64,000 bases of DNA from IMGVR_UViG_3300028883_000032:62001-126000; one strand, 5' to 3'; numbered from the stretch's first letter, positions 16,343 to 56,004 are shown. The notes: generated by a model not told the origin, from the sequence alone. Program-made: numbers and translations.

Positions 16343-16371
16343 AATATAAACTTATTTTCAAGGTTTGTCAA
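16343..16371 (-). promoter_or_regulatory. sigma70-like promoter TTGACA-N17-TATATT (copies also at 26282-26310, 29303-29330, 36507-36535, 48602-48631, 55680-55708)
   Basis: Six intergenic copies of CTTGACW with a 16-18 nt spacer and TATATT/TATACT, all upstream of - strand genes. Confidence 0.8.
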
Positions 16372-16378
16372 GTATTAC

Positions 16379-16388
16379 GGAATAAGAA
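16379..16388 (+). promoter_or_regulatory. Conserved GGHATAAGAW box, putative phage-specific promoter (also 17130, 39993-40002 on -, 40391, 40687, 41312, 41499, 42033, 43887, 44034, 48643, 49629, 54017, 56279)
   Basis: At least 14 copies found by eye, nearly all intergenic and each at the 5' end of an accessory gene or RNA island. Confidence 0.75.
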
Positions 16389-16391
16389 AGT

Positions 16392-16760
16392 ATGGTTAAC
16401 TTACTCGGGAGACGTAACATGTTTGCAAAGCTTGAAAGAGCACTCGGCATCAGTATTCATACTGATGATCTGCTTGAAATGGTGAAGCTCATTGAAGATG
16501 TTATCAACGATTCGGGTTACAAAACCAATTACGTTTTGTGCCTTATCAAGATTGGACGATACGTTGATACGCCATACGCCAACATTCTGGCAGCTTTTCA
16601 ATCAGTGCTTGGTGCATCAGATGCAGAGTTGATGGCTTTCGGCGATCTGCAAGCTCAACTGACGAAGCACGTCAAGACTGTCGTCTTAGACGACGTCTAC
16701 CTATGCAAGTACTGCAATTATGGTCTTGAACACCCATTCCCGTTACATAATCAAAATTAA
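16392..16760 (+). CDS. hypothetical island protein (likely start 16419)
   Basis: GGGAG SD; followed by terminator ACGGGCTTAAGCCCGT-TTTT. Confidence 0.7.
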   Translation: MVNLLGRRNMFAKLERALGISIHTDDLLEMVKLIEDVINDSGYKTNYVLCLIKIGRYVDTPYANILAAFQSVLGASDAELMAFGDLQAQLTKHVKTVVLDDVYLCKYCNYGLEHPFPLHNQN

Positions 16761-16783
16761 GATTACGGGCTTAAGCCCGTTTT

Positions 16784-17116
16784 TTAGTAGTCCTGTTTAC
16801 CGTTATTGTCACGTTCTGGGATATCTTTAATTGATCCCTTGCCATGACGTTTTTCATGGTCTTTAGCCATCTTCTTTGCAATACGCGGATGTGTTGCAAA
16901 CATATAACGTTGCTGGGCTTTTGACTCAAATCCAAGCTTTTTCAAAGATGTTTTTTTCTTCTTTTTAGAATGGGATAATCCGCATTCTCCATGTTTTTTA
17001 AAGTATTCCACCTGTTGTAACCTCTTTATTGCGTGTGATCTGTGTTCATATGGTCCGCCAAGATTTTTACCCAAGCGGGAAACAACATAGTAACCATCTT
17101 TTCTTTTAACTATCAT
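16784..17116 (-). CDS. Small basic two-module virion-type protein
   Basis: MIVKRKDGYYVVS..GKNLGGPY..AIKRLQQVEYFK plus FESKAQQRYMFATHPRIAK, both motifs familiar from phage small proteins. Confidence 0.7.
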   Translation of the reverse strand: MIVKRKDGYYVVSRLGKNLGGPYEHRSHAIKRLQQVEYFKKHGECGLSHSKKKKKTSLKKLGFESKAQQRYMFATHPRIAKKMAKDHEKRHGKGSIKDIPERDNNGKQDY

Positions 17117-17167
17117 AAAGCACCTTTATGGCATAAGATTGTGTAACCTAACTTTAGGAGAAGAATT

Positions 17168-17254
17168 ATGCCTCGTGGAGACGGAACGGGTCCTGACGGA
17201 AAAGGACCACGGACGGGCAGAGGTACGGGAACGTGCCCCCCAGTAAAAAAATAA
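17168..17254 (+). CDS. DUF5320-like micro-protein (28 aa, not in ORF track)
   Basis: AGGAG SD; MPRGDGTGPDGKGPRTGRGTGTCPPVKK matches the MPxGDGTGP..GP.TGRG.G.C pattern. Confidence 0.8.
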   Translation: MPRGDGTGPDGKGPRTGRGTGTCPPVKK

Positions 17255-17263
17255 CGGTATGAC

Positions 17264-17486
17264 AGGTCCACGTGTGTTAAGTCTCAGAAGGCAGAGCTGC
17301 CCTATCCTAGGAATTGGGGTGGAGCCGTGTGCACGGGATCCGGCTTTCGAGCCTTCGCGACCCCTACGAGTAGCGAAGGACAAGGCTCGCATCAAAACGC
17401 AGTGCAAATCCACGGACACTACAGTGGACTTATCGCCCCACGTTGGGGCAACCGCCAAACAAGGTACTTCGGTGCCTTGTTTTTTT
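17264..17486 (+). ncRNA. Structured ncRNA candidate, possibly 6S-like, with terminator
   Basis: GC-rich and ORF-poor; closing stem AGGTCCAC/GTGGACTT, inner stems CGAGCC/GGCTCG and CCTTCGC/GCGAAGG, cUUCGg terminator. Confidence 0.55.
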
Positions 17487-17946
17487 ACAGCAATGTCAAT
17501 AAAATATACAGCATGAAAGCAAATATAAAACCAATACTTACTGCCCCATTAAAGTCCCAATTCAACCAATCTGCAAAACTAAACCCATTTGAATACAGTA
17601 GTTCCTGTTTCCATGCAGGCTGCTTATTACCATATATATACCAAGGTTTCCAACCATCAAATACTTCCCACAGACCTCCTATTACCCAAGATGTCAAACA
17701 TGCTACTATTGGCATTAAAGCAGTTTGCCAATTAAATAAAAACCAGAATGCAGCGACTAAAACTAAAGCAATAAATAAACTGCCGAGTAGGTGCCATTTT
17801 CCATATTTTCCAATATTGGTCTCTTTAATAAAATTCCACTTAAACCCAAACCTGTTAGTACGCACAGCGTCTGGACCTTCGGGAAGACCATCTGTTGGAT
17901 ACCCAAAAAAATCTCTTGTTTTTTTAGTAAAATACAAATCCATCAT
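17485..17946 (-). CDS. Membrane protein
   Basis: Three hydrophobic segments. Confidence 0.65.
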   Translation of the reverse strand: MMDLYFTKKTRDFFGYPTDGLPEGPDAVRTNRFGFKWNFIKETNIGKYGKWHLLGSLFIALVLVAAFWFLFNWQTALMPIVACLTSWVIGGLWEVFDGWKPWYIYGNKQPAWKQELLYSNGFSFADWLNWDFNGAVSIGFIFAFMLYILLTLL

Positions 17947-18632
17947 CGCCCTATTTGCCTCAGAATGTGATGTATAGTTTCCGGTAGCTCTCCAAATTCA
18001 TGTTCTACCGCTTTATATGCAACATTTTTATCACTGTATCGTGGCATGCCTAGTCCCCACCTATATGCCTCTTTACGTTCAGAATCTAGTTTTCTATACA
18101 AATTAGCCACATCTTGTGCCTCTTCAAGAGTAGGACGTTTTTCAGCTTGTTCTACTTGTCTCCCCATTTCCCTAGTTAATAAATCTAAATATGGTTTATT
18201 TAACTCGTTAATACGCTCCTCAAATCCGACTGGGCGGTCGTCTGGCTTTTTTATCCATTTGTCATTGATGACATCATATCCCGCCATTAAAGCTTCTGTA
18301 TTTGCTCTGTCAATTTCCGGTAAAACAAAATAATTCACTGGATGCTTAGTCGTACCAAGCATATTTTTACCAGAGCGATTAAATGCCTTAGCTATTGCAC
18401 TATAATAGTCTACAGCATTTTTGTCACTAAGCTCAACCTGTACATCAATATCGCTCGTATCACTATAATAGTATCCCAAAATGGAGCCTATAACGGTGAT
18501 GCCTCTAATAAACTTTGGCGGTATTACACCGTATAAATCTTCTATTAACTCTACCCTTACGGATGGCCTTAATTTGTCATTAATAAAAACAGCGGGCGAA
18601 AGTACACTTTTCTTTTTATCAAAAATACTCAT
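17943..18632 (-). CDS. Pol-beta-superfamily nucleotidyltransferase
   Basis: IGSILGYYYSDTSDIDVQV (GS..DxD), HPVNYFV. Confidence 0.8.
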   Translation of the reverse strand: MSIFDKKKSVLSPAVFINDKLRPSVRVELIEDLYGVIPPKFIRGITVIGSILGYYYSDTSDIDVQVELSDKNAVDYYSAIAKAFNRSGKNMLGTTKHPVNYFVLPEIDRANTEALMAGYDVINDKWIKKPDDRPVGFEERINELNKPYLDLLTREMGRQVEQAEKRPTLEEAQDVANLYRKLDSERKEAYRWGLGMPRYSDKNVAYKAVEHEFGELPETIHHILRQIGR

Positions 18633-19981
18633 TAGCGTAGGGCTTCCAATACTTGGTTTATTTCATCTTGTTTACGTCTGCTCATGGACATTAAATACTG
18701 TCCAGAACTTACAGGGGCGTGCCCACTAAAAAACGATTTTGGTAAAGTAGAAACGTATGTTTTTACTTTTACTGTTTTTGACGGATCGTCTCCGCGACGT
18801 ATGCCGCGGGCGGCGGCTTGATCAAGGCGACTTTTATTCCAATGAGGTTCTACCAACTGAACCAAACTAGTCTTTGGTAAGTTCAGGCCTTCAGAACCGG
18901 CACCGCTATATAAGAATGCTTTAACCTTACCTGAGTTGTATTGCTTAATTTGATCTAACCTGTTTGGGCCGGACATTTCCCCTGTAAGTACAGAATGCTT
19001 TATACCCAAAGCCTTCAATCTTCTTGATAGCGGCTCTATTCCGGCTCCAATGTAGTTCGAATAAGCCAATACTTTGCCGCCTCTTGCTAATTCCTCTGTC
19101 ATGTCTTTAACAACTTTATCCAGTTTAGTTGATTCCGCTTTAGCGGGATTTTTTACGTATGGAGCTGTTGTATTACTTACCTGTCGTAACCCAGACATGA
19201 AAGCATTTAGACTAGGTCTCTCCTGCTTTGAAGGTGGTAAATTCTTCTCAATTTTATAACGCACACTACGAGGAATCTGTTTGTTTAAGTATTTGTATAG
19301 TTTTGCTTGTCTTGGACCCATCTCAACACTAACTATTTCGCGGGAACTGTGCGGTATCAAGCCTTTAAATTGCTGTGTTTTTGCCACGTGAACATACGGT
19401 TTAACAACGTTTTTTAAATATGCTCTATTTTTAAGTTGTTTAACATCCCCGGGTTTTACTCCAGTAATTCTTGCAAAAAACGGAACGCTCACCTTTTTGT
19501 CTTCAAAAAACATTTTGTTAAAGCGTTCTTTGTCCATAGGAACTAAAGGCTTATTGGCGGCCAAGTTAACTTGGGTCGCCAAATCTGAAGCTTCGTTGTA
19601 CATGGGCGTTGCGGACAGTAGCAATGCCTTACGGTATTTTTGTCTTTGTTTTAATATATTTGAAAATGCTTTTGTTTCGGGGTTACGTATATATTGAGAC
19701 TCATCTATAACTAGTGCATCTCCACCAGGCAACTTATTTCCTCTAGAGATGGCTGCAAAGGTTGATGTGGTACGAGAGGATTTAGTCCCAAAAGCTTTTT
19801 GCTCTTCTTGCTCAAAATTTTTCTTTAGCGAAGCCGTGCCAACAACGCTAGTCTTCCTACCTCTAGTAGCATTTAACGCTAAGCGGGTTTTACCAGAACC
19901 GGTTGGATGTACCACTAATAGGCCGGTCGGGGACTGGCGGTATTTCTTTAGTGCCTGTTCTTGTGGTGGTAACATTACCAC
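18632..19981 (-). CDS. SF2 (SNF2-like) helicase
   Basis: HPTGSGKT, VIDESQ, LSATP, GSEGLNL, QAAARGIRRG. Confidence 0.9.
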   Translation of the reverse strand: MVMLPPQEQALKKYRQSPTGLLVVHPTGSGKTRLALNATRGRKTSVVGTASLKKNFEQEEQKAFGTKSSRTTSTFAAISRGNKLPGGDALVIDESQYIRNPETKAFSNILKQRQKYRKALLLSATPMYNEASDLATQVNLAANKPLVPMDKERFNKMFFEDKKVSVPFFARITGVKPGDVKQLKNRAYLKNVVKPYVHVAKTQQFKGLIPHSSREIVSVEMGPRQAKLYKYLNKQIPRSVRYKIEKNLPPSKQERPSLNAFMSGLRQVSNTTAPYVKNPAKAESTKLDKVVKDMTEELARGGKVLAYSNYIGAGIEPLSRRLKALGIKHSVLTGEMSGPNRLDQIKQYNSGKVKAFLYSGAGSEGLNLPKTSLVQLVEPHWNKSRLDQAAARGIRRGDDPSKTVKVKTYVSTLPKSFFSGHAPVSSGQYLMSMSRRKQDEINQVLEALR

Positions 19982-21357
19982 ATCTCCCTGAAGCCCAAAA
20001 AGACTGGCATTCTAAATTTTTCGGTAGCAGGATAAAAGTCCTGATAAGACACTTTTATTAACTTACCTATGTACTGACCCGGATTATTAAAAAAGTCTCG
20101 TCTGAGGTCATCTGTGAGCCCTGAGCCTATACGTATGTTAGCGGGACCATCTTTTTTTAGACTAGCAATTATTCCGCCAACGGCTACTCCGTCATATTTA
20201 GAATTTTTGGCAGCAGGATAAAAGCCCCTTATATAAACTTCAGTGTCCTTGGCCATCTTCATCTTTGATGGTACTGGTGAATCTAAATCAAATTCAACAA
20301 TTCCTTCTGAAGTAAGGGGGTATCGTCCAGACTTAACATCTGATAACAACATTTGTTTGTCGCTCCAAGTTTGTGCCATTGGGGCTAGCTTAAGACCTGG
20401 AGTCAAATCTACTACTTCTTTTAAAAGGGGGAACTTGTCTCTATACGGCAAGTTTGCGACATTACGACCACGATAGGTATCAATGTCATAAATGATGTGA
20501 TCCAATCCGCCTTTTTCAGCTTGCAATTCGCGGGATTTCATTGTACTGGCATTAAGCATGCCTGACGTCTCATTGGACGCTAGCACCTTTCCAGTATTGT
20601 CTTTTGCAAACAATTCTCCACGCAATACCGTCTCATTACCAACTTCAGGCGGAGCAATATTACGATATAGCGATGTTTTAAACGTGTGGTCTATTAATGC
20701 GTTGTTGTCTTTGCGACTTACCCTATATGAATAAGTCTCTATGGGCTTATCTTTACGAAGTACAAACAAAGCGTGCGCACCATCAATTTTTGGAGACCAT
20801 ATTTTTGAGTCATCCATATAGTCCAATTTTGATAGTTCCTTCTCTTTGTACTTCGGCTTATAGGCAGGAACAGAGCGAGATAAGCGAGTAGGCGTGTGAT
20901 TGACCAACAACCAATTTTTCCCATCAAAAGCTTTGATCAGTGTATAACGCCCAGGAGTAGTGCTTTTATGTACAACAAACGACAACTTACCTGGCTCTGC
21001 CTTAACAACCTCTACCTTATCTCTAGCCTCCAAACTAACATTACCCTTACCATACCCACTCTCTATTTTACCTTCAAAATTCATGTAGTCAAGTGTGTGA
21101 GTAGGCTGATGGATAGCTAGAACTTTTTCCCCAGGTTTTGGTAGGTGTTGTATAACCCACGAATGAGCATGGCCTGTTTCCGGATCACCCAGCCGTAGAT
21201 CTTTATGTGGACCGGCAACTTCCGCCTCATGACTATGAACCGCAAATTCCCAAATAACAGGATCCTTTACTTTGGGAATATTTTGGAACTTATTTCTATC
21301 GGGAATGCCGGGAATTGTCTCACCATTTTTGATTAACAACAGTTCACGTAAATTCAT
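19975..21357 (-). CDS. LigD-type 3'-phosphoesterase fused to ATP-dependent DNA ligase
   Basis: PE motifs VHSH, PHKDLRL, HTLDY.NFEG; ligase PKIDG, RGELF, YDI, EGIV, OB fold IGSGL. Confidence 0.88.
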   Translation of the reverse strand: MNLRELLLIKNGETIPGIPDRNKFQNIPKVKDPVIWEFAVHSHEAEVAGPHKDLRLGDPETGHAHSWVIQHLPKPGEKVLAIHQPTHTLDYMNFEGKIESGYGKGNVSLEARDKVEVVKAEPGKLSFVVHKSTTPGRYTLIKAFDGKNWLLVNHTPTRLSRSVPAYKPKYKEKELSKLDYMDDSKIWSPKIDGAHALFVLRKDKPIETYSYRVSRKDNNALIDHTFKTSLYRNIAPPEVGNETVLRGELFAKDNTGKVLASNETSGMLNASTMKSRELQAEKGGLDHIIYDIDTYRGRNVANLPYRDKFPLLKEVVDLTPGLKLAPMAQTWSDKQMLLSDVKSGRYPLTSEGIVEFDLDSPVPSKMKMAKDTEVYIRGFYPAAKNSKYDGVAVGGIIASLKKDGPANIRIGSGLTDDLRRDFFNNPGQYIGKLIKVSYQDFYPATEKFRMPVFLGFREMW

Positions 21358-21359
21358 TA

Positions 21360-22160
21360 TTATCTCACGTACTCCACTAAATCGGGGACACTGAGACGGT
21401 ACCTTATGTCACCTTTGGGAATTATCTCCATACGAGAATTATTAATTACTGTCACTAATCCTTTTTGGGTAGGTCTTACTTCAAGTATTTCGTATCTTTT
21501 GTTATCATAACTAACAACCACATCCCCCGGTTCTACGTCTGGCCATGGTGGAGAGGTTAGAATTGCATCCGTAATTTGCCACTCTCCCCATTGCAACTGA
21601 GCTTGTCTCTTTGGAGTTGGGTTAATCATGCAAGTTCTTATTATGGGAGTATAATAGCCCCCCTGATAGCCCGTATCGTAACAAGTACTGCAATTGGCAG
21701 TCTGATGCCGTCCTATGGTTACATCATAATCTGGACATCTTGTTCCACTAGTTTTTTTCTTAAAAATAGCACAAGGTCTACCAGTTAGTCTAAAAGCAAT
21801 ATCTTCGGTTCTAATAATAGCGTCACTATAAATATCTCCATAAGATGCCTGCTTTACAGGATTGCAGATATCTCCAGTATTAGACCCGTCGGTAAATGAC
21901 AGGGCGTAATAAAGTTCCTGCCACTGGTCGTACTCATAACCAGAGATAGTGGTATCTGTCCACCCATAATCATCAGCTGAGATTACTCCAGAAGACACTA
22001 AATCAAACTCATCTATAATTCCAGAATGGGCCGCCCAAAATCCCCTGTAGATGTTTACAGTGTAAACACTGGAATCCTCATCAGTATTTTCCAGTGTCCA
22101 ATGTAAATTCATCACTCCTGGTTCATAGGATCTTATCAGTAACTCATCTAGTGCTATCAT
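21360..22160 (-). CDS. Putative neck/head-closure protein
   Basis: KKKTSGTRCP..CSTCYDTGYQGGYY, PDVEPGDVVV; position in head-tail block. Confidence 0.6.
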   Translation of the reverse strand: MIALDELLIRSYEPGVMNLHWTLENTDEDSSVYTVNIYRGFWAAHSGIIDEFDLVSSGVISADDYGWTDTTISGYEYDQWQELYYALSFTDGSNTGDICNPVKQASYGDIYSDAIIRTEDIAFRLTGRPCAIFKKKTSGTRCPDYDVTIGRHQTANCSTCYDTGYQGGYYTPIIRTCMINPTPKRQAQLQWGEWQITDAILTSPPWPDVEPGDVVVSYDNKRYEILEVRPTQKGLVTVINNSRMEIIPKGDIRYRLSVPDLVEYVR

Positions 22161-22163
22161 TTT

Positions 22164-22622
22164 TTACCAAGATGCATCATAATATTCGGAACTTACACTA
22201 CCGTAACAATCGCTAATGTTCTGTTTTTTCTTCAAACCAGTTACTCTGTCTACCCACGATTTTTCAATAAGATTAAACCAGTTTAGGTAGTTTTTCCATT
22301 TATCATAAGCCTGTATTTGTACTCCTCCTGTGTCATTGTAGCTGACTGCATTACGGGCACTCCAAATGCCATGGCCTATTAATACTTGTTTTAAGGTCCC
22401 GTATTTTAAAGCAGAATATGATGGGAAGTCGTCGATTGTCCACGATGTTTCTATGTGTGGAAGAACAGCGTTATTTGCTTCGTCAACCGCATCTAGCATT
22501 GATTGGTAAATATAGGAATCCGAGCTTTCTTGAATTTTTTCAAGAAAATTTCTATCTACTGTATCCTCTACCCAAGTTCTTATGTTATCTATATAAGACT
22601 GTTCTGTTGTTGAATATGCCAT
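22164..22622 (-). CDS. Putative head-tail adaptor
   Basis: Helical protein with SYNDTGGVQI motif upstream of neck gene. Confidence 0.55.
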   Translation of the reverse strand: MAYSTTEQSYIDNIRTWVEDTVDRNFLEKIQESSDSYIYQSMLDAVDEANNAVLPHIETSWTIDDFPSYSALKYGTLKQVLIGHGIWSARNAVSYNDTGGVQIQAYDKWKNYLNWFNLIEKSWVDRVTGLKKKQNISDCYGSVSSEYYDASW

Positions 22623-22704
22623 ATTAGTAAACCCACGTTACAGTTACTGTTATAGACCCGCCACTTCCGGCCCAATCAAGTGTTATTAATGCATCACATA
22701 CTTA

Positions 22705-24528
22705 TTAATATCTTCGAATTACAATGTCCGACACCATACTATTTTCACGAAAGTTCAAGGTAAAATAACTACTTGCTGTTATATCCGCGTCTGTAATTGG
22801 ATTGGTAGCTAATCCAAACAAAACCCAACCATTCCATCCGTATTCACCGCCCTTAACATAAACATAAATATCATTAGATAAATCTCTAATAAATTTAAAT
22901 CTGTACCAAATACCATCGCTTGCTAAAAGATCATCGCCGGAAGACAGAACGGTTCTTGTTCCTGCTACTGTTTTTCTAAAAGAAAAAGTCTCTGGTGCGG
23001 CGCTAAGATATAAAACCAAATAGTATCCGGTACCATAATTTTGGTTTTCTATGTCCGTTTTATCTGACAAAATATAGCATTCATGTGCTATATTTTCATT
23101 GGAGCAATTTACGGAAAATTCCCATTCACCATATGCAACATCGCAAGGTATAGACATGTTACCATCACTACTAAATTTCATGGCATTTTTTCTAACACCA
23201 TTTATTTCTGTTTCAACTATTTTAACAGATGCGGCACCATCTGAAATCCAATTTGGTATTTGTTTTGTTACGCCGTCGGCCCCATAGTCAAAAGTTTCTC
23301 TTATAACAACAGAGTCTGAATGTAGCTCCGTCAACTTCATTTTAGTAACTGTCATAAACCTTGAAGAAGGATCGTCTTCCAAGATGCACTTAGGATACAC
23401 CGTTTGCGTTGATTTTGCTATAGCCACTTTTGATAGTGACTGAGGAGAAGAAAAGTCAGTATTTCGAAATATATAATTAATACCAAACACATTAGAACTC
23501 ATGTTTGATTGTATAACATCGAAGAAACCCAATCCATCCTTGTTTTCACTGTCTCCATTAAAAGCGGCCAACTCTATCAAGTATGGTTTTCCTGCCTTTA
23601 CATTAACCCCATTGGTAAACCAAACCGGGGCATTCACATCTTCATCATCCTCCAAACGTAATTGTCCATTTTGAAACTCGAAGACATCGGGGTCTCCATC
23701 TGTTGACCATTCGCTGACATCCAAATGATCTTTCATGTCAAATAAGACAAGACCCCTTCCAAATCCAGTTACAGGTATGACAATATTTCCGATAGTCTTA
23801 GCTTTTGAATATTCCGAATATGTTTGTGATACAAGATCAGTCATTTTTCCATCAGTTAACCCGTTTACCCCAAAACGGTACAATCTAACCCTACTAAACA
23901 ACCCACCGATTCCGCCCACCCCTCCTCCAGCGGTATAGGAACCTATTTTCAAAGGAAATGCATTATCAACACTCCCTATAACAGAACCATAAGCGGCACT
24001 GTATAGGGGTGAAGGAGATACTCCATCTTTATAAAGCGTAACTTTCGTCACTGAAGAACCATCATCCTTATCTACAAATATTAATAAATGAACCAACTTT
24101 GATACATTTTTACTTAACTCTGGTGCAATTGAAAGTTCACCTCCCGTGGTTCCATCACAAATTTCAAATCTTACGGTATCATTTGACCCTCTGTAAATAA
24201 ACATCCATCCGGGTTTGGTTGCCAAATAATCTTCTATTTTTCCTATAAGACTATTTCTTCCTGAATCTACATTTATTAGATTTACCCATAATTCTATAGC
24301 GAAATCTTCTAATCCAAAATTTAGTCTATTTTGATTTGCGTCTAATAAACTCAGATAAGGTGTAGTAGAACGATCTACTCTTCCTGCTCCTCTTAAAATA
24401 CCATTTTTAACTCCCAACTGCATAGAATTGTTATTTGTAAAGGGAACAGTTTGAATACCGGACTGGTCGTAAAGAGAATACCCTTGCCAATCAAGAACAA
24501 TATTTTTTTTGAAATCTGGGCTTAACAT
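22705..24528 (-). CDS. LamG/concanavalin-like lectin domain tail fibre or receptor-binding protein
   Basis: DFAIELWVN, HLLIFVD, LYKDG, LKIGS..GLFSRVRLY; further beta-sandwich domains. Confidence 0.7.
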   Translation of the reverse strand: MLSPDFKKNIVLDWQGYSLYDQSGIQTVPFTNNNSMQLGVKNGILRGAGRVDRSTTPYLSLLDANQNRLNFGLEDFAIELWVNLINVDSGRNSLIGKIEDYLATKPGWMFIYRGSNDTVRFEICDGTTGGELSIAPELSKNVSKLVHLLIFVDKDDGSSVTKVTLYKDGVSPSPLYSAAYGSVIGSVDNAFPLKIGSYTAGGGVGGIGGLFSRVRLYRFGVNGLTDGKMTDLVSQTYSEYSKAKTIGNIVIPVTGFGRGLVLFDMKDHLDVSEWSTDGDPDVFEFQNGQLRLEDDEDVNAPVWFTNGVNVKAGKPYLIELAAFNGDSENKDGLGFFDVIQSNMSSNVFGINYIFRNTDFSSPQSLSKVAIAKSTQTVYPKCILEDDPSSRFMTVTKMKLTELHSDSVVIRETFDYGADGVTKQIPNWISDGAASVKIVETEINGVRKNAMKFSSDGNMSIPCDVAYGEWEFSVNCSNENIAHECYILSDKTDIENQNYGTGYYLVLYLSAAPETFSFRKTVAGTRTVLSSGDDLLASDGIWYRFKFIRDLSNDIYVYVKGGEYGWNGWVLFGLATNPITDADITASSYFTLNFRENSMVSDIVIRRY

Positions 24529-24529
24529 A

Positions 24530-24745
24530 TTATATTGTTTCTTCTACTATATATAAAGGAACACAAATATTATATAGAGCTTCTATCTTATAATGTTCAT
24601 TTGTAGAAACTGGTCCAAAAATATAAACGTGTTCTATGTGACGCGCTAAATCTGAAGCATTTGAAAACTCTTCTTTAACAGACTCGGCGTATTCTAATAT
24701 TTCTTGTAATTTTTCTTCAGTCATAATTTTATCCTGAATATTCAT
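24530..24745 (-). CDS. hypothetical protein
   Basis: ORF in late operon. Confidence 0.55.
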   Translation of the reverse strand: MNIQDKIMTEEKLQEILEYAESVKEEFSNASDLARHIEHVYIFGPVSTNEHYKIEALYNICVPLYIVEETI

Positions 24746-25286
24746 GTAGACCGACGTAAAAAGTTAGTGTTTTAGCATCTTGTCCTGGGCACATGCAACG
24801 AGCCCATACTTTTGTTCCCGCGTCTTGCCTTTCCGTCTGAATAACTACCGGACCAGAATCAATTAAATTTGACGCCGGCGTAAACACACAATCAGTATAA
24901 TCTCCAGCAGTTAAAGCTGTAGCTCCATCGGCTCCAAAAGCTACTTGAAAAAAGTAGGACGAATTTTGGCTTGCCGCCGCAAATTCCAGTCGATGCAAAT
25001 CAAATTTGGTATTACCTGCATCTGCGGGCGTATCGTCTGCCCCAAGTATTTGGAGCCAATCCCCCCAAGTATCATCCCCTGAAGTAACTGTGAAAACTCC
25101 TGCCCCATCTGCGTCGCCTATTTCTACAGCAACGTGATCTTCGCCATCTGGAGTACCTGCTAGTTCAAACCAACGTTCATTGGAATGAAGATGACGTTCA
25201 ATTTCAGCAACCGCATGTCCTATGGTGCCATCCGTGGCACTAAGTCCTGTGGATACCGATACATCTGGATTATAATTTCCGTGCAT
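24729..25286 (-). CDS. Putative virion structural protein
   Basis: EIERHLHS.ERWF..LYVGLHEY pattern, acidic beta-rich. Confidence 0.5.
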   Translation of the reverse strand: MHGNYNPDVSVSTGLSATDGTIGHAVAEIERHLHSNERWFELAGTPDGEDHVAVEIGDADGAGVFTVTSGDDTWGDWLQILGADDTPADAGNTKFDLHRLEFAAASQNSSYFFQVAFGADGATALTAGDYTDCVFTPASNLIDSGPVVIQTERQDAGTKVWARCMCPGQDAKTLTFYVGLHEYSG

Positions 25287-26248
25287 TATAGTGCCTTTCT
25301 ACGACCTTTTACAATAACAGTATTTGTTGCCCCGTCATTAACAATTACCGCTCTAACATATTTGAAAATTACATTTTCAAGATCAATAGCAAAAGTTATT
25401 GTACCATTTGTAACCGTAACCGAAGAGGCATCAGAGGCAGCATTGCAGTCATAAAATTGTATTGCCACCCAATCTCTATTGGTGGCCGTGGAGTCTTCGT
25501 CATTAGATGCTTCAATTGTCAATGTAACTGTCCCATCCGCATCAATAAATTTTCCTGTAAAAGAAAGATCTTTGTAGCCATCCATGTCATACCCACTGGT
25601 ACTTGGGTAGTAGTGTGTATCGGCCCCTAAGTTTGTTGTGTCTAATGTGTTTAATAATTGATACTGTTCATTTAATGGACTTATATCCTCAGAATAGATA
25701 GCATCATTTGTTGAATCGTATGCCTTTGTGGGACCATTGACACCTACTTCATATGAGTCACCAGATGCAAATGGAGATGCTCCTGTTATACTAACTGTGC
25801 CACCGGAATAGGATAGTGTAATACCGGCATATCCATTAAAATACACATTACTAGATGTCCCGGCAGTATCAACAACCCTTACATATACTAACTGTGAGTC
25901 GTCTGAAATTGCAATGGGCAGGCCAGTCAACGTAATGGTGGAACTTGTCCCAAACGCAGCTGTAAAATCACTGGGACTTTTGTATTCCGCTATTAACTGA
26001 CCTTTACGATTTGCGTCCGAAACAGCAAGGGCATTGTCTGAATAAGCAATTGTTGAACCATCAGCTACTTTCACCTGTGCATCTGAGGTGGGGTCTGTTA
26101 GTATTGCTGGAAGAGCATTTTCAGAATCTAAATTAATGGATACATCTTCTACAGTAACCGGCAATGGGTTTTCTGGAGATACGGTTACACGCACTTGTTC
26201 CTCTGCACCGGTCGGTTTAAAATGGATATATGTGCTACTACTTGACAT
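25286..26248 (-). CDS. Putative virion structural/decoration protein
   Basis: VSPENPLPV motif, Thr/Asp/Ser-rich beta sandwich. Confidence 0.5.
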   Translation of the reverse strand: MSSSSTYIHFKPTGAEEQVRVTVSPENPLPVTVEDVSINLDSENALPAILTDPTSDAQVKVADGSTIAYSDNALAVSDANRKGQLIAEYKSPSDFTAAFGTSSTITLTGLPIAISDDSQLVYVRVVDTAGTSSNVYFNGYAGITLSYSGGTVSITGASPFASGDSYEVGVNGPTKAYDSTNDAIYSEDISPLNEQYQLLNTLDTTNLGADTHYYPSTSGYDMDGYKDLSFTGKFIDADGTVTLTIEASNDEDSTATNRDWVAIQFYDCNAASDASSVTVTNGTITFAIDLENVIFKYVRAVIVNDGATNTVIVKGRRKAL

Positions 26249-26317
26249 ATTTCCCCCAATTTTTATGGATTATCATATCTTAATATACTTAAAAAACTCT
26301 TTAAAGTCAAGTAAAAA

Positions 26318-26342
26318 AGCCTCCCAAAATATTTAGGAGGCT
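26318..26342 (-). terminator. Terminator after major capsid gene
   Basis: AGCCTCCTAAATATTTTGGGAGGCT-TTTTT on - strand. Confidence 0.8.
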
Positions 26343-26365: not shown

Positions 26366-27343
26366 TTAGTTAGTCCAGTATACCTTTGCCATTGAATAGG
26401 CGTTACCAATACCCATGCCGATAATCTCATAAAGACTCCAGCTGATAAGGTTACGTTTCTTTTCAATCCAGAACTTAACATCACCCAATATATAGGCGTG
26501 ACCCATATATTGTTTTGGTGTAAAGCCGTACATTGTGCCAGGAGGTACAAGTTCGCCTTTATTGGTAACAATAAGATCTTTACCAAAGATTGTGGTGTAG
26601 GTCCAGCCGTTTACTGTGGTGTTTTCTGCGATTGCGTTACCGCGATCATCAGCACGCCACAAAAGGATCTTGTTGTAATCTTCACGATTCATGAGGATTA
26701 CGGAGCAATCATAACGTCTAGCATCAAAATCATGCTCGTAAATTGTTGATCCAGCTGAATTCTTTAAACTCGTACTACCAACGGTACTTGAATTCTCAAG
26801 CAAGTTGAATAGACGTACAAACAACATCGGATCAAGCTCATTATTATTTGTATTGTAGGCTGTAGAATTTTCGTACTTACCTGACAATGCAACGGCATCT
26901 TCGACGCGACTAATGAATCCTTGGTCTTCAATTGCATGAAGATCTTTTAGAGAGTTATTTTCGATGATCTCTGTTAGAGGCATCTCATAAGCTAAAAGCT
27001 CTTCTTCTACTTTCTGGTATTCTCTTGAGCTGATTCCGTAAAATGCAATTTCATAACGTTCACCCATGATGTACTCAGAATCTGGTGCACCACGGAAGTT
27101 AATTTCCATCGCTACTGAATTGGGCTCGAGATCCACGACCTTAACCAGCTGGTCGTGATTTACAGAGCGTTGACATTCTGCCTTTGTAATAGGCTGAGGC
27201 ATCATAATTTTGCGTGAGAAAGAAACTTCACGCATGCGCTGACGAATGTATGAGCTTGTGCTCATCGCAAGCTTGGCGCGATCCTCTGGAGAATCCAACG
27301 ACTCAACAAACAGTTCATTAAGAATTTCAGGACTTGTTGCCAT
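26366..27343 (-). CDS. Major capsid protein (HK97-like fold inferred)
   Basis: Follows protease, scaffolds and decoration gene, ends at a strong terminator; C-terminal P-domain pattern GKDLIVT..GTMYGF..YEIIGMGIGN. Confidence 0.75.
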   Translation of the reverse strand: MATSPEILNELFVESLDSPEDRAKLAMSTSSYIRQRMREVSFSRKIMMPQPITKAECQRSVNHDQLVKVVDLEPNSVAMEINFRGAPDSEYIMGERYEIAFYGISSREYQKVEEELLAYEMPLTEIIENNSLKDLHAIEDQGFISRVEDAVALSGKYENSTAYNTNNNELDPMLFVRLFNLLENSSTVGSTSLKNSAGSTIYEHDFDARRYDCSVILMNREDYNKILLWRADDRGNAIAENTTVNGWTYTTIFGKDLIVTNKGELVPPGTMYGFTPKQYMGHAYILGDVKFWIEKKRNLISWSLYEIIGMGIGNAYSMAKVYWTN

Positions 27344-27354
27344 TTTTTATCTCC

Positions 27355-27807: not shown

Positions 27808-27819
27808 GTGGTATCCTCC

Positions 27820-28272: not shown

Positions 28273-28325
28273 TGCCTCCAGTTAAGTATAATAAGGGGCC
28301 CCGGCAGGGCCAAGGCCCCTAAAAG

Positions 28326-29251: not shown

Positions 29252-29348
29252 GCTCTTGCCTCCTAATAAGTTTTCTAATTATCGGTTTTCACCTACTAAA
29301 TAAGTATAATACTATTTTTGTATTTGTCAAGTCTTTTTTTAAACTTTT

Positions 29349-30152: not shown

Positions 30153-30153
30153 T

Positions 30154-30780: not shown

Positions 30781-30782
30781 TT

Positions 30783-41498: not shown

Positions 41499-41543
41499 GG
41501 TATAAGAAATTACATGTTCACATTTAACGTTAAAGGGAAAACT

Positions 41544-43868: not shown

Positions 43869-43896
43869 GTTGTTTTCTCCATATATGGCATAAGAA

Positions 43897-48562: not shown

Positions 48563-48682
48563 TGAGGTACCTCTTTTTAGTTATAAATCCGGATTCAATA
48601 CAATATAACACATTTATCCACCATTTGTCAAGTCTAATATTTGGAATAAGAATGTAACATTAACAATACTAGGGGGAACATC

Positions 48683-49595: not shown

Positions 49596-49672
49596 AGCCC
49601 AAATGGGGCTTTATTTTTACTCCAAAATGGCATAAGAATAAGAGAGTATACTACTACCAAAAGGAGAGGGAC

Positions 49673-53673: not shown

Positions 53674-53999
53674 TACAGATACACTCCAGATGTAGATATT
53701 AGACTAATGAATCCCAGTATGTATGCGTGTTGTATTATATTGTGTGGCCCAACTTCAAACGCCACTAAACACGGAGTTTCACGGGGAACAACCACTGTCT
53801 CTCCGCCGACAGTACTTAACCAAGGTTCTGGTCTAACAAGTCTGGCTTCAATACCCTTATCCCTCGGACCAAATGCAGCAAGTTCATCCTCGTTTATTGG
53901 TTTGATCCAGTAACGACTGGTTTCAGGTTCAGAAGAAGCCACTTTCCACACTTTAATGGGGTATTTAAATTCTACTTGCCCATCTTCATAACTAAACAT
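53673..53999 (-). CDS. Putative baseplate OB-fold protein
   Basis: VVPRE.TPCLVAFE..AYILGF pattern. Confidence 0.4.
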   Translation of the reverse strand: MFSYEDGQVEFKYPIKVWKVASSEPETSRYWIKPINEDELAAFGPRDKGIEARLVRPEPWLSTVGGETVVVPRETPCLVAFEVGPHNIIQHAYILGFISLISTSGVYL

Positions 54000-54063
54000 T
54001 ATTTGCTCTCCATTTTGGAATAAGAATATAGCAGCATATCATACAACCCCAGGAGGTAGAGAC

Positions 54064-54588
54064 ATGGTATTGGCATTGCTTATTATTGGCGCCCTGCTCC
54101 TTCTGGGAGCGGGTATTGGTTTCAGTAAAGAGTTTCATAGATACGTGTCAACTATGATACTCCTAGGTGTCATGTTGGCCTCTGTGTATCTGGCCATTCT
54201 TGGTACCATTGCGTATCAAAAAGAGTCCCTGCTATCCATGAATGACAATACCGTGGAGGCCATCAAAGTAATAATAAATACCATACCACAAGACGCATAC
54301 ATTGATAGTTCTTTTGTTATTCATGTAGCTGAAGACTATCCTGATAATATCGCCGAGGCACTTCAAGCCGCGGTTCTTGAGTACAAAACTCGAGAAAAAA
54401 TACTTGATAAAATGGAATCACCAGTACCAATAATATTCCCTTGGATACTACCCTCAAGAAATAGTGCCTCTATAATTATACATAAAGGTGATGCTGATTT
54501 CAATGCTAACTCACCATCTATTCCCCCAACTCCACTAGAAAACGTAACACAAGATACATGTGGCAAGTTAGATCAAAGTTTCCGGTGA
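54064..54588 (+). CDS. Island membrane protein (two N-terminal TM helices)
   Basis: GGAATAAGAA box at 54017, AGGAGG SD. Confidence 0.75.
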   Translation: MVLALLIIGALLLLGAGIGFSKEFHRYVSTMILLGVMLASVYLAILGTIAYQKESLLSMNDNTVEAIKVIINTIPQDAYIDSSFVIHVAEDYPDNIAEALQAAVLEYKTREKILDKMESPVPIIFPWILPSRNSASIIIHKGDADFNANSPSIPPTPLENVTQDTCGKLDQSFR

Positions 54589-55150
54589 CTTCTGCCCCAA
54601 CCCTCTAGGGTTGGGGATAGGCCTCGGAGGTCCTCCCAGAAGCGTGTACCCCGATCCTTGGATTGGTCTCGCCAATTTAAGAGGCGGAAGATCGCCCAGA
54701 CACTGGGAAATGGGGTTAGAATCCCCGCTTGCCTCACCATCGGGAAGTAGCTCAGGTCCGTAAGAGCACCACCCAACGGGGGTGGAGGTCCTTGGTTCAA
54801 ATCCAAGCTTCCCGGCAATACCACCATCGTGGGTGAAAAGCCCACTACAACCAGCAGTATGGCACCGTGTGGAACTTAGTGAAGCAGGGTGTCATTAACA
54901 TACTAGTGTCGATGACGTGCCGATAAGCATGCAATGGTAGACCCCCTACCGTCTGTCATTGTGTGGAATAACGGTGACATCCTAATACCAGTTATAAAGC
55001 CAGCTGGGGCAACACTAGTAACGACTCCCAGACCACAATGGCCTTAATACTGATGCCGGACCAGATTCGGTGGTTGATCATCGAGGTCGCGCTACCACAG
55101 TTTAAGCCTCCCGGACGTGAGTCGACCGGGTGTGGGGTAGGAAAACTCCC
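54589..55150 (+). ncRNA. Large ornate structured RNA candidate with tRNA-like modules
   Basis: GC-rich, no credible ORF, more than 12 helices, crossing long-range pairings, complementary loops TACTAGTGT (54901) and ACACTAGTA (55012). Confidence 0.65.
54741..54815 (+). tRNA. Atypical tRNA-Pro-like element with aberrant anticodon loop CAACGGG
   Basis: CGGGAAG/CTTCCCG acceptor, GCTC/GAGC D stem, CCACC/GGTGG stem, CTTGG-TTCAAAT-CCAAG; lacks U33, D-loop GG and adjacent CCA. Confidence 0.6.
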
Positions 55151-55156
55151 ATGTTT

Positions 55157-55191
55157 CGCCCTCTTCGCACATTGTGCGGAAAGGGCGTTTT
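55157..55191 (+). terminator. Intrinsic terminator ending RNA island
   Basis: CGCCCT..TTCGCAC-ATT-GTGCGGAA..AGGGCG-TTTT. Confidence 0.75.
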
Positions 55192-55501
55192 ATTTAGCCC
55201 TAATTTTCCTTACTTCTTCTCGTACACGGTAGAATGTTAGTAGTTCTTCGTATTGTTCTGCGTCTACCCCGAGGAACTCTATAAGATTTTCTTGTGTTTC
55301 TGCCCACTCCAAGAGTTTTTGGGGAGTAATCTCGTCTCCACTAGGAGTACAGATGGGTATGGTTACAATGTCATCCCTGTCCCTATCTCTATACATCTTT
55401 AGAGCTTGTTCGACTACCCAACTTTTGGTTTGATAGTTGTCAGTAACCGAGTCTAACCAGTCACTTAAGCTATCACTTAATGTTATTGTGTGTCTAGCCA
55501 T
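55190..55501 (-). CDS. Ribbon-helix-helix DNA-binding protein
   Basis: MARHTITLSDSLSDWLDSV..TKSWVVEQAL. Confidence 0.7.
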   Translation of the reverse strand: MARHTITLSDSLSDWLDSVTDNYQTKSWVVEQALKMYRDRDRDDIVTIPICTPSGDEITPQKLLEWAETQENLIEFLGVDAEQYEELLTFYRVREEVRKIRAK

Positions 55502-55628
55502 GACTCGCACAGAAGGAAGTAATCCATTTTTCTATCAAAGCAGACATACTATACCCGTGTTCTTTACATACTGCCCTGAATGTTGCCATGATCTCTTTTG
55601 ATACAGAGAAGTTAACTCGTATTTTCAT
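55494..55628 (-). CDS. Ribbon-helix-helix micro-protein (44 aa, not in ORF track)
   Basis: GAGG SD; MKIRVNFSVSKEIMATFRAVCKEHGYSMSALIEKWITSFCASHG. Confidence 0.75.
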   Translation of the reverse strand: MKIRVNFSVSKEIMATFRAVCKEHGYSMSALIEKWITSFCASHG

Positions 55629-56004
55629 TTTTTCCTCAAAAGTTTTGTTGGGTAGTGCTAACGTGCACACCCATGTTTAAATATACACAATAATATGTCA
55701 TAAGTCAAGTATGAACCCCTGTTTACTTTCCAGGATAACAGATGAATGCTAATAAATTTGAAGTACGTATTTTTCCCCCGAAAAGAAATTGGGGAGGGAA
55801 AACCATATCATTACGGCCATACGGAACTATACCCCCAAATTCGTACTATGGTACAAAGCCATACCAGACTGCGATAATGCAAAGAGGGTTAACCTCAAAA
55901 CGAAGAGCTTGGAAAAAAAGAAAGGCCTCTTCCGGGAAAAATACTACCTTTCCCGTAAACAAGCTTCGAGGCTCTATATCCCGCATCAGTAAAGGGGCTC
56001 AGCG

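What the first reader, a model, noticed from the sequence alone, without database searches (positions are those of the whole stretch)
16343..55708. Apparently inverted promoter logic: structural genes use TTGACA-like promoters, accessory genes use a private box
Seen: six CTTGACW-N16-18-TATAYT promoters head - strand units (tail completion, fibre/neck, scaffold/MCP, 35855 block, 46736 block, RHH pair), several back-to-back with GGHATAAGAW boxes. Established: Bacteroidota housekeeping sigma recognises TTTG/TAnnTTTG rather than TTGACA/TATAAT. Inference: in an FCB-type host these E. coli-like promoters would be poorly read and could be specific targets of the phage sigma70 (5465-6268), acting as the late sigma.
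Basis: inference. Interest (0 to 1): 0.6.

Follow-up and report, generated by a model that had tools for sequence, protein, structure and literature searches.

The report
Two promoter classes, self-transcribing jumbo phage
An uncultured 207-kb marine-sediment phage that carries its own bacterial-type RNA polymerase and two sigma factors puts its virion genes under textbook TTGACA/TATAAT-like promoters and its other genes under a private GGnATAAGA box, most likely a phage-run early-to-late switch.

Summary
CTTGACW-N16-18-TATAYT occurs 7 times in the window (0.07 expected) and GGHATAAGAW 14 times (1.1 expected). Six of the sigma-70-like sites head minus-strand units. Those units contain the orthologues of the virion-detected proteins of Salmonella phage Arash (tail sheath, major capsid protein, protease, virion helicase) and its large terminase. 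The box faces plus-strand genes (34 of 35 copies genome-wide).

The genome also encodes a fused beta-beta' RNA polymerase (2,046 aa) and a second, divergent sigma. The box is conserved in Arash and Vibrio phage D69. In Arash the polymerase and the sigma-2 orthologue are found in virions.

The window's sigma (sigma-1) keeps the -35-reading residues of region 4.2. Its Arash and D69 orthologues have lost them, and those phages' late promoters lack a -35 element.

Best reading (inferred): packaged polymerase with sigma-2 reads the box early, and sigma-1 then reads the TTGACA class late. No RNA data exist to confirm this.

The FCB-host premise is unproven. Sigma-1's nearest cellular relatives are FCB-type primary sigmas, but ribosome-binding-site use argues against a classical Bacteroidota host. 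This is a new variant of known phage sigma and virion-polymerase strategies.

The parts
16343..16372 (-). Sigma-70-like promoter (C-TTGACA, 17 nt, TATATT) heading the tail unit
   Evidence: Exact match; hexamer coordinates. Six bases from box 16379 on the other strand. The downstream unit holds the sheath and orthologues of Arash gp236/gp237. Sister phages carry the same kind of promoter at the syntenic place (L031:19196, L033:19272).
26282..26311 (-). Sigma-70-like promoter (C-TTGACT, 17 nt, TATATT) directly after the capsid-gene terminator
   Evidence: Relatives have TTGACT/TTGACG-N17-TATACT/TATAAT after their capsid-gene terminator (L042:6991, L044:6982).
26313..26342 (-). Intrinsic-terminator-like hairpin plus T run ending the head operon
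   Evidence: Read from the sequence upstream of the 26282 promoter.
29303..29331 (-). Sigma-70-like promoter (C-TTGACA, 16 nt, TATACT) heading the scaffold-to-capsid operon
   Evidence: Conserved in the syntenic gap in relatives (L042:4077, L043:3448, L044 gap 3799-3848).
36507..36536 (-). Sigma-70-like promoter (C-TTGACA, 17 nt, TATATT) heading the PhoH/terminase/protease unit
48602..48632 (-). Sigma-70-like promoter (C-TTGACA, 18 nt, TATATT) heading a 608-aa gene of unknown function
   Evidence: Ten bases from box 48643 on the other strand. No family hit for the 608-aa protein.
55680..55709 (-). Sigma-70-like promoter (C-TTGACT, 17 nt, TATATT) heading two small ribbon-helix-helix-like genes
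   Evidence: The ribbon-helix-helix call rests on the sequence pattern only; Pfam gave no hit.
1198..1227 (+). Seventh sigma-70-like site (C-TTGACA, 17 nt, TATATT), plus strand, inside the 3' end of ORF 862-1308
5465..6268 (+). Sigma-1: primary-like sigma-70 factor, 267 aa, regions 1.2, 2, 3 and 4
   Evidence: Pfam. Contact residues. Orthologue of Arash gp196 and D69_0246. Relatives. Tree.
4206..4215 (+). Box variant GGTATAAGTA (identical to the Arash consensus), 1.26 kb upstream of sigma-1 with tRNA-Cys between
16379..16388 (+). Box GGAATAAGAA
   Evidence: An SD-led start lies 34 nt downstream.
17130..17139 (+). Box GGCATAAGAT
39993..40002 (-). The only minus-strand box, heading minus-strand unit 36522-39964 (unknown proteins, no Arash orthologues)
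40391..40400 (+). Box GGCATAAGAA
40687..40696 (+). Box with no long plus-strand ORF behind it
41312..41321 (+). Box GGAATAAGAT
41499..41508 (+). Box GGTATAAGAA before ORF 41514-41990
42033..42042 (+). Box after a terminator-like hairpin, pointing into minus-strand ORFs 42208-43937
43887..43896 (+). Box GGCATAAGAA
44034..44043 (+). Box before ORF 44069-44485
48643..48652 (+). Box back-to-back with promoter 48602, before the CxxCxxCC-domain gene 48915-49595
49629..49638 (+). Box after a terminator, before the helix-turn-helix gene 49673-50398 and the HAD (RNA-repair type) gene 50388-50903
54017..54026 (+). Box before ORF 54064-54588
56279..56288 (+). Box at the strand switch, preceded by a (TTTA)7 repeat
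60815..60824 (+). Box variant GGAATAAGAC, intergenic
11519..16329 (-). Tail unit: sheath 12844-14427 and gp237-like 11519-12826
   Evidence: PHROG tail sheath; Arash gp236/gp237 orthologues.
16784..26248 (-). Mixed virion/DNA unit: lectin-like 607 aa, gp233/gp234 orthologues, ligase, and a helicase orthologous to the virion helicase gp217
   Evidence: Arash proteome.
26366..29251 (-). Head operon ending in the major capsid protein 26366-27343
   Evidence: PHROG major head protein; Arash gp226 orthologue; 166 relatives.
29349..36475 (-). Packaging unit: PhoH, large terminase 31790-33403, prohead protease-like 29349-30152

Best explanation
The window is part of a complete 206.9-kb phage genome that brings its own bacterial-type transcription machinery: a fused beta-beta' RNA polymerase and two sigma-70-family factors. 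It uses two promoter classes, separated almost perfectly by strand.

Class 1 is the compact box (T-rich tract, GGnATAAGAw, no -35 element). It drives the plus-strand genes: replication, tRNAs, small proteins and the sigma-1 gene itself. It is most likely read by the phage polymerase carrying sigma-2, delivered from the virion, so this class would be early or middle.

Class 2 is the consensus-like C-TTGACw, 17 +/- 1 nt, TATAyT promoter. It drives the minus-strand virion modules: tail, head, packaging, portal and baseplate, the polymerase and sigma-2. It is most likely read by sigma-1 (window 5465-6268), made from class 1 transcripts, so this class would be late.

Shown here: both motifs are real, oriented, intergenic and conserved in relatives. 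The gene classes they head are established. Sigma-1 keeps the -35 contact residues and sigma-2 does not. Late-promoter architecture co-varies with sigma-1 region 4.2 across the family.

Inferred: virion packaging (by orthology with Arash), the timing, and which core enzyme sigma-1 uses. Sigma-1 keeps the canonical core-binding region 2.2, so host core is possible.
For: Motif statistics.

Machinery: fused polymerase with Rpb2_6 at 212 bits, Rpb1 domains and an intact NADFDGD motif; two sigmas.

Orthologues: all 13 orthologues of Arash virion proteins, the large terminase and the polymerase lie in minus-strand units headed by sigma-70-type promoters. Plus-strand genes match Arash non-structural genes (ligase, DNA polymerase).

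Arash virions: they contain polymerase beta (the most spectra), beta', sigma Gp10 and helicase Gp217 (PMC10585845). Gp10 is the orthologue of our sigma-2 (E 1e-30), and gp196 of our sigma-1.

Box conservation: GGTATAAGtA is the top intergenic word on the non-structural strand of Arash, and gTTATAAGTAA of Vibrio phage D69.

Late promoters of the TTGACA type are conserved at syntenic gaps in five metagenomic relatives.

Co-variation: region 4.2 is RERVRQIK in sigma-1 and its sister phages, which have a -35 element. It is degenerate in Arash gp196 and D69_0246, whose late promoters are -10-only TAAAAT(A).

Sigma-2/Gp10 lack W433, W434 and Q437, the region 4.2 contacts and the region 2.2 core-binding motif. 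The phage beta' clamp helices are divergent.

A box variant lies upstream of sigma-1. Sigma-2 and the polymerase sit behind TTGAAA-N17-TATACT and TTTACA-N18-TATACT.
Against: There is no transcript or protein data for this phage. The only run that holds it is DNA.

Virion packaging is known for Arash only, which shares about 28-35% identity.

The TTGACA class also heads non-structural genes: methyltransferase, ligase, PhoH and an exonuclease.

If the host's own primary sigma reads TTGACA/TATAAT, these near-consensus promoters would fire from the start without sigma-1.

Sigma-1's canonical region 2.2 and the divergent phage clamp helices leave open which core it uses. The complex prediction gave no verdict.

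No promoter was mapped directly upstream of sigma-1; the nearest box is 1.26 kb away.
Confidence: 0.55

Rival explanations
1. The TTGACA/TATAyT promoters are ordinary host promoters, read by the host's primary-sigma holoenzyme. This would resemble phage N4, where an injected phage polymerase does early transcription and host sigma-70 polymerase does late transcription. The box would be read by the phage polymerase with one or both phage sigmas, and sigma-1 would have another role.
For: The sites are near-perfect bacterial consensus promoters. Shine-Dalgarno use (39% against 11% background) points to a host with conventional expression signals. The class also heads non-structural genes. Sigma-1's assignment is inferred only.
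Against: Strong consensus promoters read by the host would express virion genes from the start of infection.

In Arash and D69, whose hosts do read TTGACA/TATAAT, the orthologous virion modules avoid that motif and use a -10-only element.

Presence or absence of the -35 element follows sigma-1 region 4.2, not the host.

The -36 C (11 of 14 sites) and the absence of TATAAT in this genome suggest a slightly private specificity.
Confidence: 0.25
2. One reading: the host is an FCB-type bacterium whose sigma A reads TTTG/TAnnTTTG, so the TTGACA-class promoters are silent until phage sigma-1 redirects the host core to them.
For: Sigma-1's nearest cellular relatives are 284-291-aa primary sigmas of Bacteroidales, Chitinophagaceae, Ignavibacteriales and Gemmatimonadaceae. 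It shares the FCB-type substitutions L386F, S428I, T440L, H455N and E591K. It keeps the canonical core-binding region 2.2. No TAnnTTTG enrichment occurs in intergenic DNA, so no host-type promoters are needed. The -10 TATATT equals the first six positions of TAnnTTTG (-12 to -5 per PMC9723704), so the promoter could derive from an FCB type.
Against: The phage sigma clade is not nested within FCB sigmas. Shine-Dalgarno use is clearly higher than in a Bacteroides phage, while Bacteroidota mRNAs lack such sites (PMC6847099). Arash gp196 and D69_0246 share K441 and T429 with sigma-1, so the gene may be old in the phage family rather than a host capture. This version ignores the phage polymerase and sigma-2.
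Confidence: 0.15
3. The motifs are compositional accidents, or signals other than promoters such as operators or packaging or replication repeats.
For: No transcription start has been mapped.
Against: Enrichment is 13- to 100-fold over shuffles. The sites have strict orientation and intergenic placement. They sit after terminators, 25-50 nt before Shine-Dalgarno-led starts. They are conserved at syntenic gaps where flanking sequence is not.
Confidence: 0.03

Closest known systems
Salmonella phage Arash (OQ632216.1) and Vibrio phages D69, D181 and D148
   Same: They share terminase, capsid, portal, protease, sheath, polymerase and both sigma orthologues. Structural and other genes lie on opposite strands. 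The GG(T)ATAAG box sits on the non-structural strand. Late promoters are often back-to-back with the box. In Arash, the polymerase and sigma Gp10 are in the virion.
   Different: Identity is only about 28-35%. The Arash polymerase is split (gp206 and gp216), whereas here it is one 2,046-aa fusion. Their late promoters are -10-only TAAAAT(A), whereas here there is a full -35/-10 consensus. Their sigma-1 orthologues have a degenerate region 4.2. Their hosts are Gammaproteobacteria. The Arash paper contains no promoter analysis ('promoter' occurs 0 times).
Coliphage N4 transcription scheme (own knowledge)
   Same: A virion-delivered polymerase handles early genes, and sigma-70-type promoters serve late genes.
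   Different: The N4 virion polymerase is a single-subunit T7-like enzyme, and N4 late promoters are read by the host sigma-70 holoenzyme with N4 SSB. Here the polymerase is of the bacterial multisubunit type, and a phage sigma is available.
Bacillus phage SPO1 (gp28, gp33/34) and T4 (gp55) sigma cascades (own knowledge)
   Same: Phage-encoded sigma-family factors switch promoter classes in time. The late elements of Arash and D69 resemble the T4 -10-only TATAAATA.
   Different: Those phages use only the host core, their early promoters are host-type, and their late promoters are private. Here the pattern looks inverted, and a phage core is encoded.
phiKZ / AR9 non-canonical multisubunit polymerases
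   Same: A jumbo phage with beta/beta'-related polymerase and a packaged enzyme for early genes (PMC7598289, PMC7824862, PMC13282480).
   Different: Those enzymes are split into 4-5 highly divergent polypeptides and have no sigma homologue. Reviews state that polymerase-bearing jumbo phages lack sigma and that sigma-bearing ones lack a polymerase. Here a Pfam-recognisable fused beta-beta' co-occurs with two sigma-70-family genes.
Bacteroidota sigma A promoters (TTTG, 19-21 nt, TAnnTTTG)
   Same: TTG plus about 20 nt plus TAnnTT fits the spacing, and T at -8 fits. Sigma-1 shares FCB-type substitutions.
   Different: The TTTG at -8 to -5 is absent from all six sites, and TAnnTTTG shows no intergenic enrichment.

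Membership tests
Sigma-70-type (-35/-10) promoter | TTGACA-like hexamer, 17 +/- 1 nt spacer, TATAAT-like hexamer with A at position 2 and T at position 6 | tested here: met
   Seven window sites score 11 of 12 with 16-18 nt spacers.
Sigma-70-type (-35/-10) promoter | Placed upstream of genes in the right orientation, more often than chance, and conserved in relatives | tested here: met
   10 of 14 genome sites are intergenic against a 12.8% baseline. Syntenic conservation in L031, L033, L042, L043 and L044.
Sigma-70-type (-35/-10) promoter | A transcript starts 5-9 nt downstream of the -10 element | not testable with these tools
   No RNA run holds this sequence.
Bacteroidota sigma A promoter | -7 box TAnnTTTG (-12 to -5) with TTTG near -33 | tested here: not met
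   None of the six sites has TTTG at -8 to -5. The motif is not enriched in intergenic DNA. Definition taken from PMC9723704.
Primary-like (group 1/2) sigma-70 factor (sigma-1) | Regions 1.2, 2, 3 and 4 present, with conserved -10 and -35 contact residues | tested here: met
   Pfam r2 68.6, r4 40.9 and r3 26.3 bits; r1.2 17.5 bits, below cut-off. Q437, R584, E585, R586, R588 and Q589 are kept; H455 and E458 are lost.
Phage late sigma acting on these promoters | The factor binds a core polymerase and directs initiation at the late promoters | not testable with these tools
   Only indirect support: co-variation of region 4.2 with the -35 element. The complex prediction gave no verdict.
Bacterial-type multisubunit RNA polymerase core | Beta and beta' domains with the catalytic NADFDGD loop | tested here: met
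   Rpb2_3, Rpb2_6, Rpb1_1, Rpb1_2, Rpb1_4 and Rpb1_5 in one 2,046-aa frame. NADFDGD at residues 1378-1384. Aligns to E. coli beta 57-1295 and beta' 181-1346.
Virion-packaged polymerase system (N4, phiKZ, Arash) | Polymerase (and here sigma-2) present in virions and injected | not testable with these tools
   Shown by mass spectrometry for Arash only. Here it is supported only by orthology and by the polymerase and sigma-2 genes lying in late-type units.
phiKZ/AR9-type non-canonical polymerase | Beta/beta' split into several divergent polypeptides, with no sigma homologue | tested here: not met
   A single fused gene with strong Pfam scores, and two sigma-family genes present.

The most novel reading that the evidence does not exclude
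A large uncultured clade of 150-230-kb phages carries a complete, host-independent, bacterial-type transcription system. The virion injects a fused beta-beta' core with sigma-2, which reads a family-conserved GGnATAAG box. A second phage sigma then reprogrammes the same phage core, not the host's, to late promoters. The architecture of those late promoters (full TTGACA/TATAAT here, -10-only in Arash and D69) co-evolves with that sigma's region 4. This would be a sigma-switching holoenzyme cycle encoded entirely by a virus, outside the reviewed 'polymerase or sigma' dichotomy for jumbo phages.
Probability: 0.35. Interest if true: 0.78.

Novelty: new variant of a known kind. Interest (0 to 1): 0.62.

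Why it matters
Reviews divide jumbo phages into those with their own sigma-less polymerases and those with sigma factors that borrow the host core (PMC7824862, PMC13282480). This genome has both, as do its cultured relatives Arash and D69 and more than 100 metagenomic clusters of fused beta-beta' genes.

The promoter map gives a concrete, testable wiring diagram: which sigma reads which element, and when. It rests on natural co-variation between sigma region 4.2 and the presence of a -35 element.

Arash (Salmonella) and D69 (Vibrio) are cultivable, so the prediction can be tested directly.

It also warns that consensus 'E. coli-like' promoters in a phage do not identify early genes or the host.

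Tried and rejected
- Megablast of 20 kb against phages: no match.
- Terminase pattern scan of IMG/VR: nothing.
- T7-like polymerase family search: none found, but the control genomes were also silent, so this is uninformative.
- Bacillota host, my first guess from the strong ribosome-binding sites: not upheld. No Bacillota SigA appears among sigma-1's best 120 relatives, although it falls within the length filter. Terminase similarity to Bacillus phages is only about 26%.
- Bacteroidota-type promoters: no enrichment.
- Sequencing runs: only one DNA metagenome holds the sequence and no RNA run does.
- tmRNA as a host marker: BLAST against five reachable genomes gave only chance hits. Relatives' records are not held.
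- Complex prediction of sigma-1 (residues 1-160) with the phage beta' clamp region (1100-1420): no verdict, score 0.00. This is neither support nor evidence against.
- TAG recoding suggested by the CUA-anticodon tRNA: rejected. TAG ends 39 of 230 ORFs, and all marker genes are intact under table 11.
- 'The -10 is never TATAAT' as a family rule: rejected. Relatives use TATAAT.
- One accession for a control phage was not in the collection; crAss001 was used instead.
No other genetic code was named.

Full report
**What the window is.** The window is bases 62001-126000 of a 206,856-bp virus record at 39.6% GC. The first and last ~100 bases of the record repeat, so the genome is probably complete. 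The only public run that holds it is a marine sediment DNA metagenome, and no RNA run holds it. It has no nucleotide-level relative among deposited phages.

**Check of the observation.** CTTGACW-N16-18-TATAYT occurs 7 times in the window against 0.07 expected, and no shuffle reached 7. A seventh is on the plus strand at 1198-1227.
- All seven score 11 of 12 against TTGACA/TATAAT, with 16-18 nt spacers and a C at -36.
- Loose sigma-70-like matches are at chance level (54 against 57.2), so only the near-consensus class is meaningful.
- Genome-wide, TTGACW-N16-18-TATAHT is found 14 times against 0.9 expected. Ten of the 14 are intergenic, although only 12.8% of the genome is.
- GGHATAAGAW occurs 14 times in the window (1.1 expected) and 35 times in the genome, 34 on the plus strand. 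Six further intergenic one-base variants also lie on the plus strand.
- The box has a T-rich tract just upstream, no -35 element, and a weakly conserved TA about 3 nt downstream. It often follows a terminator hairpin. It lies about 25-40 nt before a start codon led by a Shine-Dalgarno site.
- Only two of the six promoters are truly back-to-back with a box (16343/16379 and 48602/48643).

**What the promoters head.** PHROG and Pfam scans, together with orthology to Salmonella phage Arash, give the following.
- 16343: tail unit, with the sheath at 12844-14427 and gp236/gp237 orthologues.
- 26282: a lectin-like 607-aa protein, gp233/gp234 orthologues, a DNA ligase, and a helicase orthologous to Arash gp217.
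- 29303: the scaffold-to-capsid operon.
- 36507: PhoH, the large terminase and the prohead protease.
- 48602: a 608-aa protein of unknown function.
- 55680: two small ribbon-helix-helix-like proteins.

Outside the window, weaker members of the same class precede a 25-kb minus-strand virion block and the polymerase gene. TTGAAA-N17-TATACT precedes the block with portal, baseplate wedge and sigma-2. TTTACA-N18-TATACT precedes the polymerase.

All 13 orthologues of Arash virion proteins, the large terminase and the polymerase lie in such units. None lies behind a box.

The class is not exclusive to virion genes. On the plus strand it heads a DNA methyltransferase with Hsp20, an exonuclease with a Sak4-like protein, and, in tandem with a box, a tmRNA.

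Box-driven genes in the window are mostly small and of unknown function. They also include a helix-turn-helix protein and a HAD protein of the RNA-repair type. A box variant at 4206 lies upstream of tRNA-Cys, the sigma gene and the DNA polymerase.

The genome encodes a single 2,046-aa protein that fuses bacterial beta and beta'. It has Rpb2_6 at 212 bits plus Rpb2_3 and Rpb1 domains 1, 2, 4 and 5. Its NADFDGD motif is intact, and it aligns to most of E. coli RpoB and RpoC.

It also encodes a second, divergent sigma-family protein (regions 3 and 4 by Pfam) inside the virion block.

Fused homologues of about 2,010-2,050 aa form more than 100 clusters at 39-52% identity, on contigs up to 228 kb. 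So this is a large uncultured clade.

**Relatives and the virion clue.** The best deposited relatives are Salmonella phage Arash and Vibrio phages D69, D181 and D148. The Arash paper reports, by mass spectrometry of virions, polymerase beta (the most spectra), beta', sigma Gp10 (100% coverage) and helicase Gp217. It suggests an early-transcription role and contains no promoter analysis (PMC10585845). Gp196, the other sigma, does not appear in the virion-protein passages I read.

Our sigma-2 is the Gp10 orthologue (E 1e-30). The window's sigma (sigma-1) is the gp196 orthologue (E 1e-18, regions 2-3 only). D69 has both types as well.

**The box is a family promoter.**
- In Arash (53% GC), the most enriched intergenic word is tGGTATAAGtA, followed by GTGTAA. 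It occurs about 33 times on the strand of the non-structural genes, 20-35 nt before Shine-Dalgarno-led starts.
- D69 has the variant gTTATAAGTAA, followed by GTAAC, on its non-structural strand.
- Sister phages of ours have it after terminators (L031:14509, L033:13829).

A motif kept across phages of different hosts, with about 30% protein identity between them, is best explained by recognition by conserved phage machinery.

**The late class varies, and varies with sigma-1.** Arash and D69 structural units are preceded by a -10-only cTAAAAT(A), often back-to-back with the box, and not by TTGACA.

In five metagenomic relatives of our phage (capsid 49-70% identity, sigma-1 44-45%), consensus TTGACw-N16/17-TATAAT or TATACT sits in the syntenic gaps. 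These are the gaps before the tail block, before the scaffold-capsid operon and after the capsid terminator. The flanking sequence is not conserved.

Sigma-1 and 14-16 of its 16 clade members keep R584, E585, R586, R588 and Q589 (region 4.2) and Q437. Arash gp196 and D69_0246 have lost the region 4.2 motif. So the -35 element is present where region 4.2 is intact and absent where it is not.

Sigma-1 lacks H455 and E458, the readers of the extended -10 element. Accordingly, only one of the six sites has TGn there.

Sigma-2, Gp10 and D69_0011 lack W433, W434 and Q437, the region 4.2 contacts and the DLIxEGNxGL core-binding motif of region 2.2. This fits a private -10-like box without a -35 element. 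It also fits a co-evolved, divergent clamp-helix site on the phage beta', which has a seven-residue deletion and Leu at the R275 equivalent.

**Model.** Packaged phage core with sigma-2 reads the box (early or middle genes, including sigma-1). Sigma-1 then reads the TTGACA class (late genes, including the polymerase and sigma-2, which are then packaged).

The sequence facts and the co-variation are shown here. The packaging, the timing and the core used by sigma-1 are inferred. Sigma-1's canonical region 2.2 leaves host core as a real option. The one complex prediction gave no verdict.

**Host.** My first impression of a Bacillota host, from strong ribosome-binding sites, did not hold.
- Sigma-1's best cellular relatives (41-45% identity) are all short primary sigmas of 284-291 aa, named Bacteroidales, Chitinophagaceae, Bacteroidota, Ignavibacteriales and Gemmatimonadaceae.
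- Sigma-1 shares their diagnostic substitutions.
- In a tree, however, the phage clade stands apart and is not nested in any FCB phylum. Some of its residues (K441, T429) are shared with Arash and D69, so the gene may be old in the phage family.
- Shine-Dalgarno motifs precede 39% of ORFs (background 11%). The figures are 62% against 10% in Arash and 22% against 13% in Bacteroides phage crAss001.
- Bacteroidota mRNAs lack such sites (PMC6847099; PMC9723704).
- TAnnTTTG is not enriched between genes.

The host phylum therefore stays open. An FCB relative outside the classical Bacteroidota would reconcile the data, but this is a guess.

In the two relatives whose hosts do read TTGACA/TATAAT, the late promoters avoid that motif.

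**Comparison with known systems.** The scheme combines a virion-delivered polymerase (N4, phiKZ, AR9) with a phage sigma switch (SPO1, T4).
- Unlike N4, the polymerase is of the bacterial multisubunit type.
- Unlike phiKZ and AR9, it is a fused, Pfam-recognisable enzyme, and sigma-family genes are present.
- Two reviews state that polymerase-bearing jumbo phages lack sigma homologues, and that sigma-bearing ones lack a polymerase and use the host core.
- Only the Arash paper notes the polymerase-plus-sigma combination, and it does not discuss promoters.

I rate this a new variant of a known kind.

**Limits.** My gene calls are a simple longest-ORF scheme. Start codons are approximate, so the Shine-Dalgarno figures are lower bounds. 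The ribbon-helix-helix call has no family support. No transcription start is mapped.

Noticed in passing
G000:C1:150804-151167 (L026:205-570), outside the window: A phage-encoded tmRNA (Rfam RF00023, 111.8 bits; ARAGORN tag peptide GETPVLKAA). It sits behind a tandem TTGACA-N17-TATATT promoter and a box (genome 150703 and 150733).
   Followed up: partly
G000:C1:4202-4275 (L041:4202-4275): A tRNA with a CUA anticodon (amber-suppressor type, labelled Pyl by ARAGORN), among 27 tRNA genes. TAG is still an ordinary stop (39 of 230 ORFs), so there is no wholesale recoding.
   Followed up: partly
G000:C1:153628-159768 (L006:629-6769, minus strand): A fused beta-beta' RNA polymerase of 2,046 aa with an intact NADFDGD motif. 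More than 100 metagenomic clusters of the same fusion exist, many interrupted by inteins or homing endonucleases (PF14528, PF14890, PF05204).
   Followed up: yes
window 56089-56215 and G000:C1:201597-201800: Clusters of GTAGTAAAGTAGTA-type direct and inverted repeats. The window cluster coincides with the cumulative GC-skew minimum and the minus-to-plus strand switch, so these are candidate replication-origin iterons.
   Followed up: no
window 56240-56267: A (TTTA)7 simple repeat immediately upstream of the box at 56279.
   Followed up: no
window 40687-44043: A box-dense stretch. The boxes at 40687, 42033 and 43887 point into minus-strand ORFs (42208-43937) with no plus-strand ORF behind them. 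They may give antisense or non-coding transcripts. Rfam finds nothing there.
   Followed up: partly
window 6327-6354: A strong 12-bp hairpin followed by a T run, directly after the sigma-1 stop codon and inside the next called ORF. It may be a terminator or attenuator separating sigma-1 from the DNA polymerase.
   Followed up: no
window 54741-54816 and about 2755-2790: The tRNA-Arg(ACG) called by ARAGORN at 54741-54816 is not reported by Rfam at the gathering score. A tRNA-like T-arm (GGTTCGAATCC type) near 2770-2790 is not called as a tRNA by either tool.
   Followed up: no
G000:C1:1-130 and 206756-206856: The first and last ~100 bases of the record are the same sequence. This indicates terminal redundancy or circular closure, so the genome is probably complete.
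   Followed up: partly
L031:3445-3738: A sister phage encodes a 97-aa protein with the C-terminal domain of translation initiation factor IF3 (PF00707).
   Followed up: no
window 18632-19981: A helicase orthologous (36% identity) to Arash gp217. In Arash, gp217 is abundant in virions and is encoded next to beta', so it may be a transcription-associated helicase packaged with the polymerase.
   Followed up: partly
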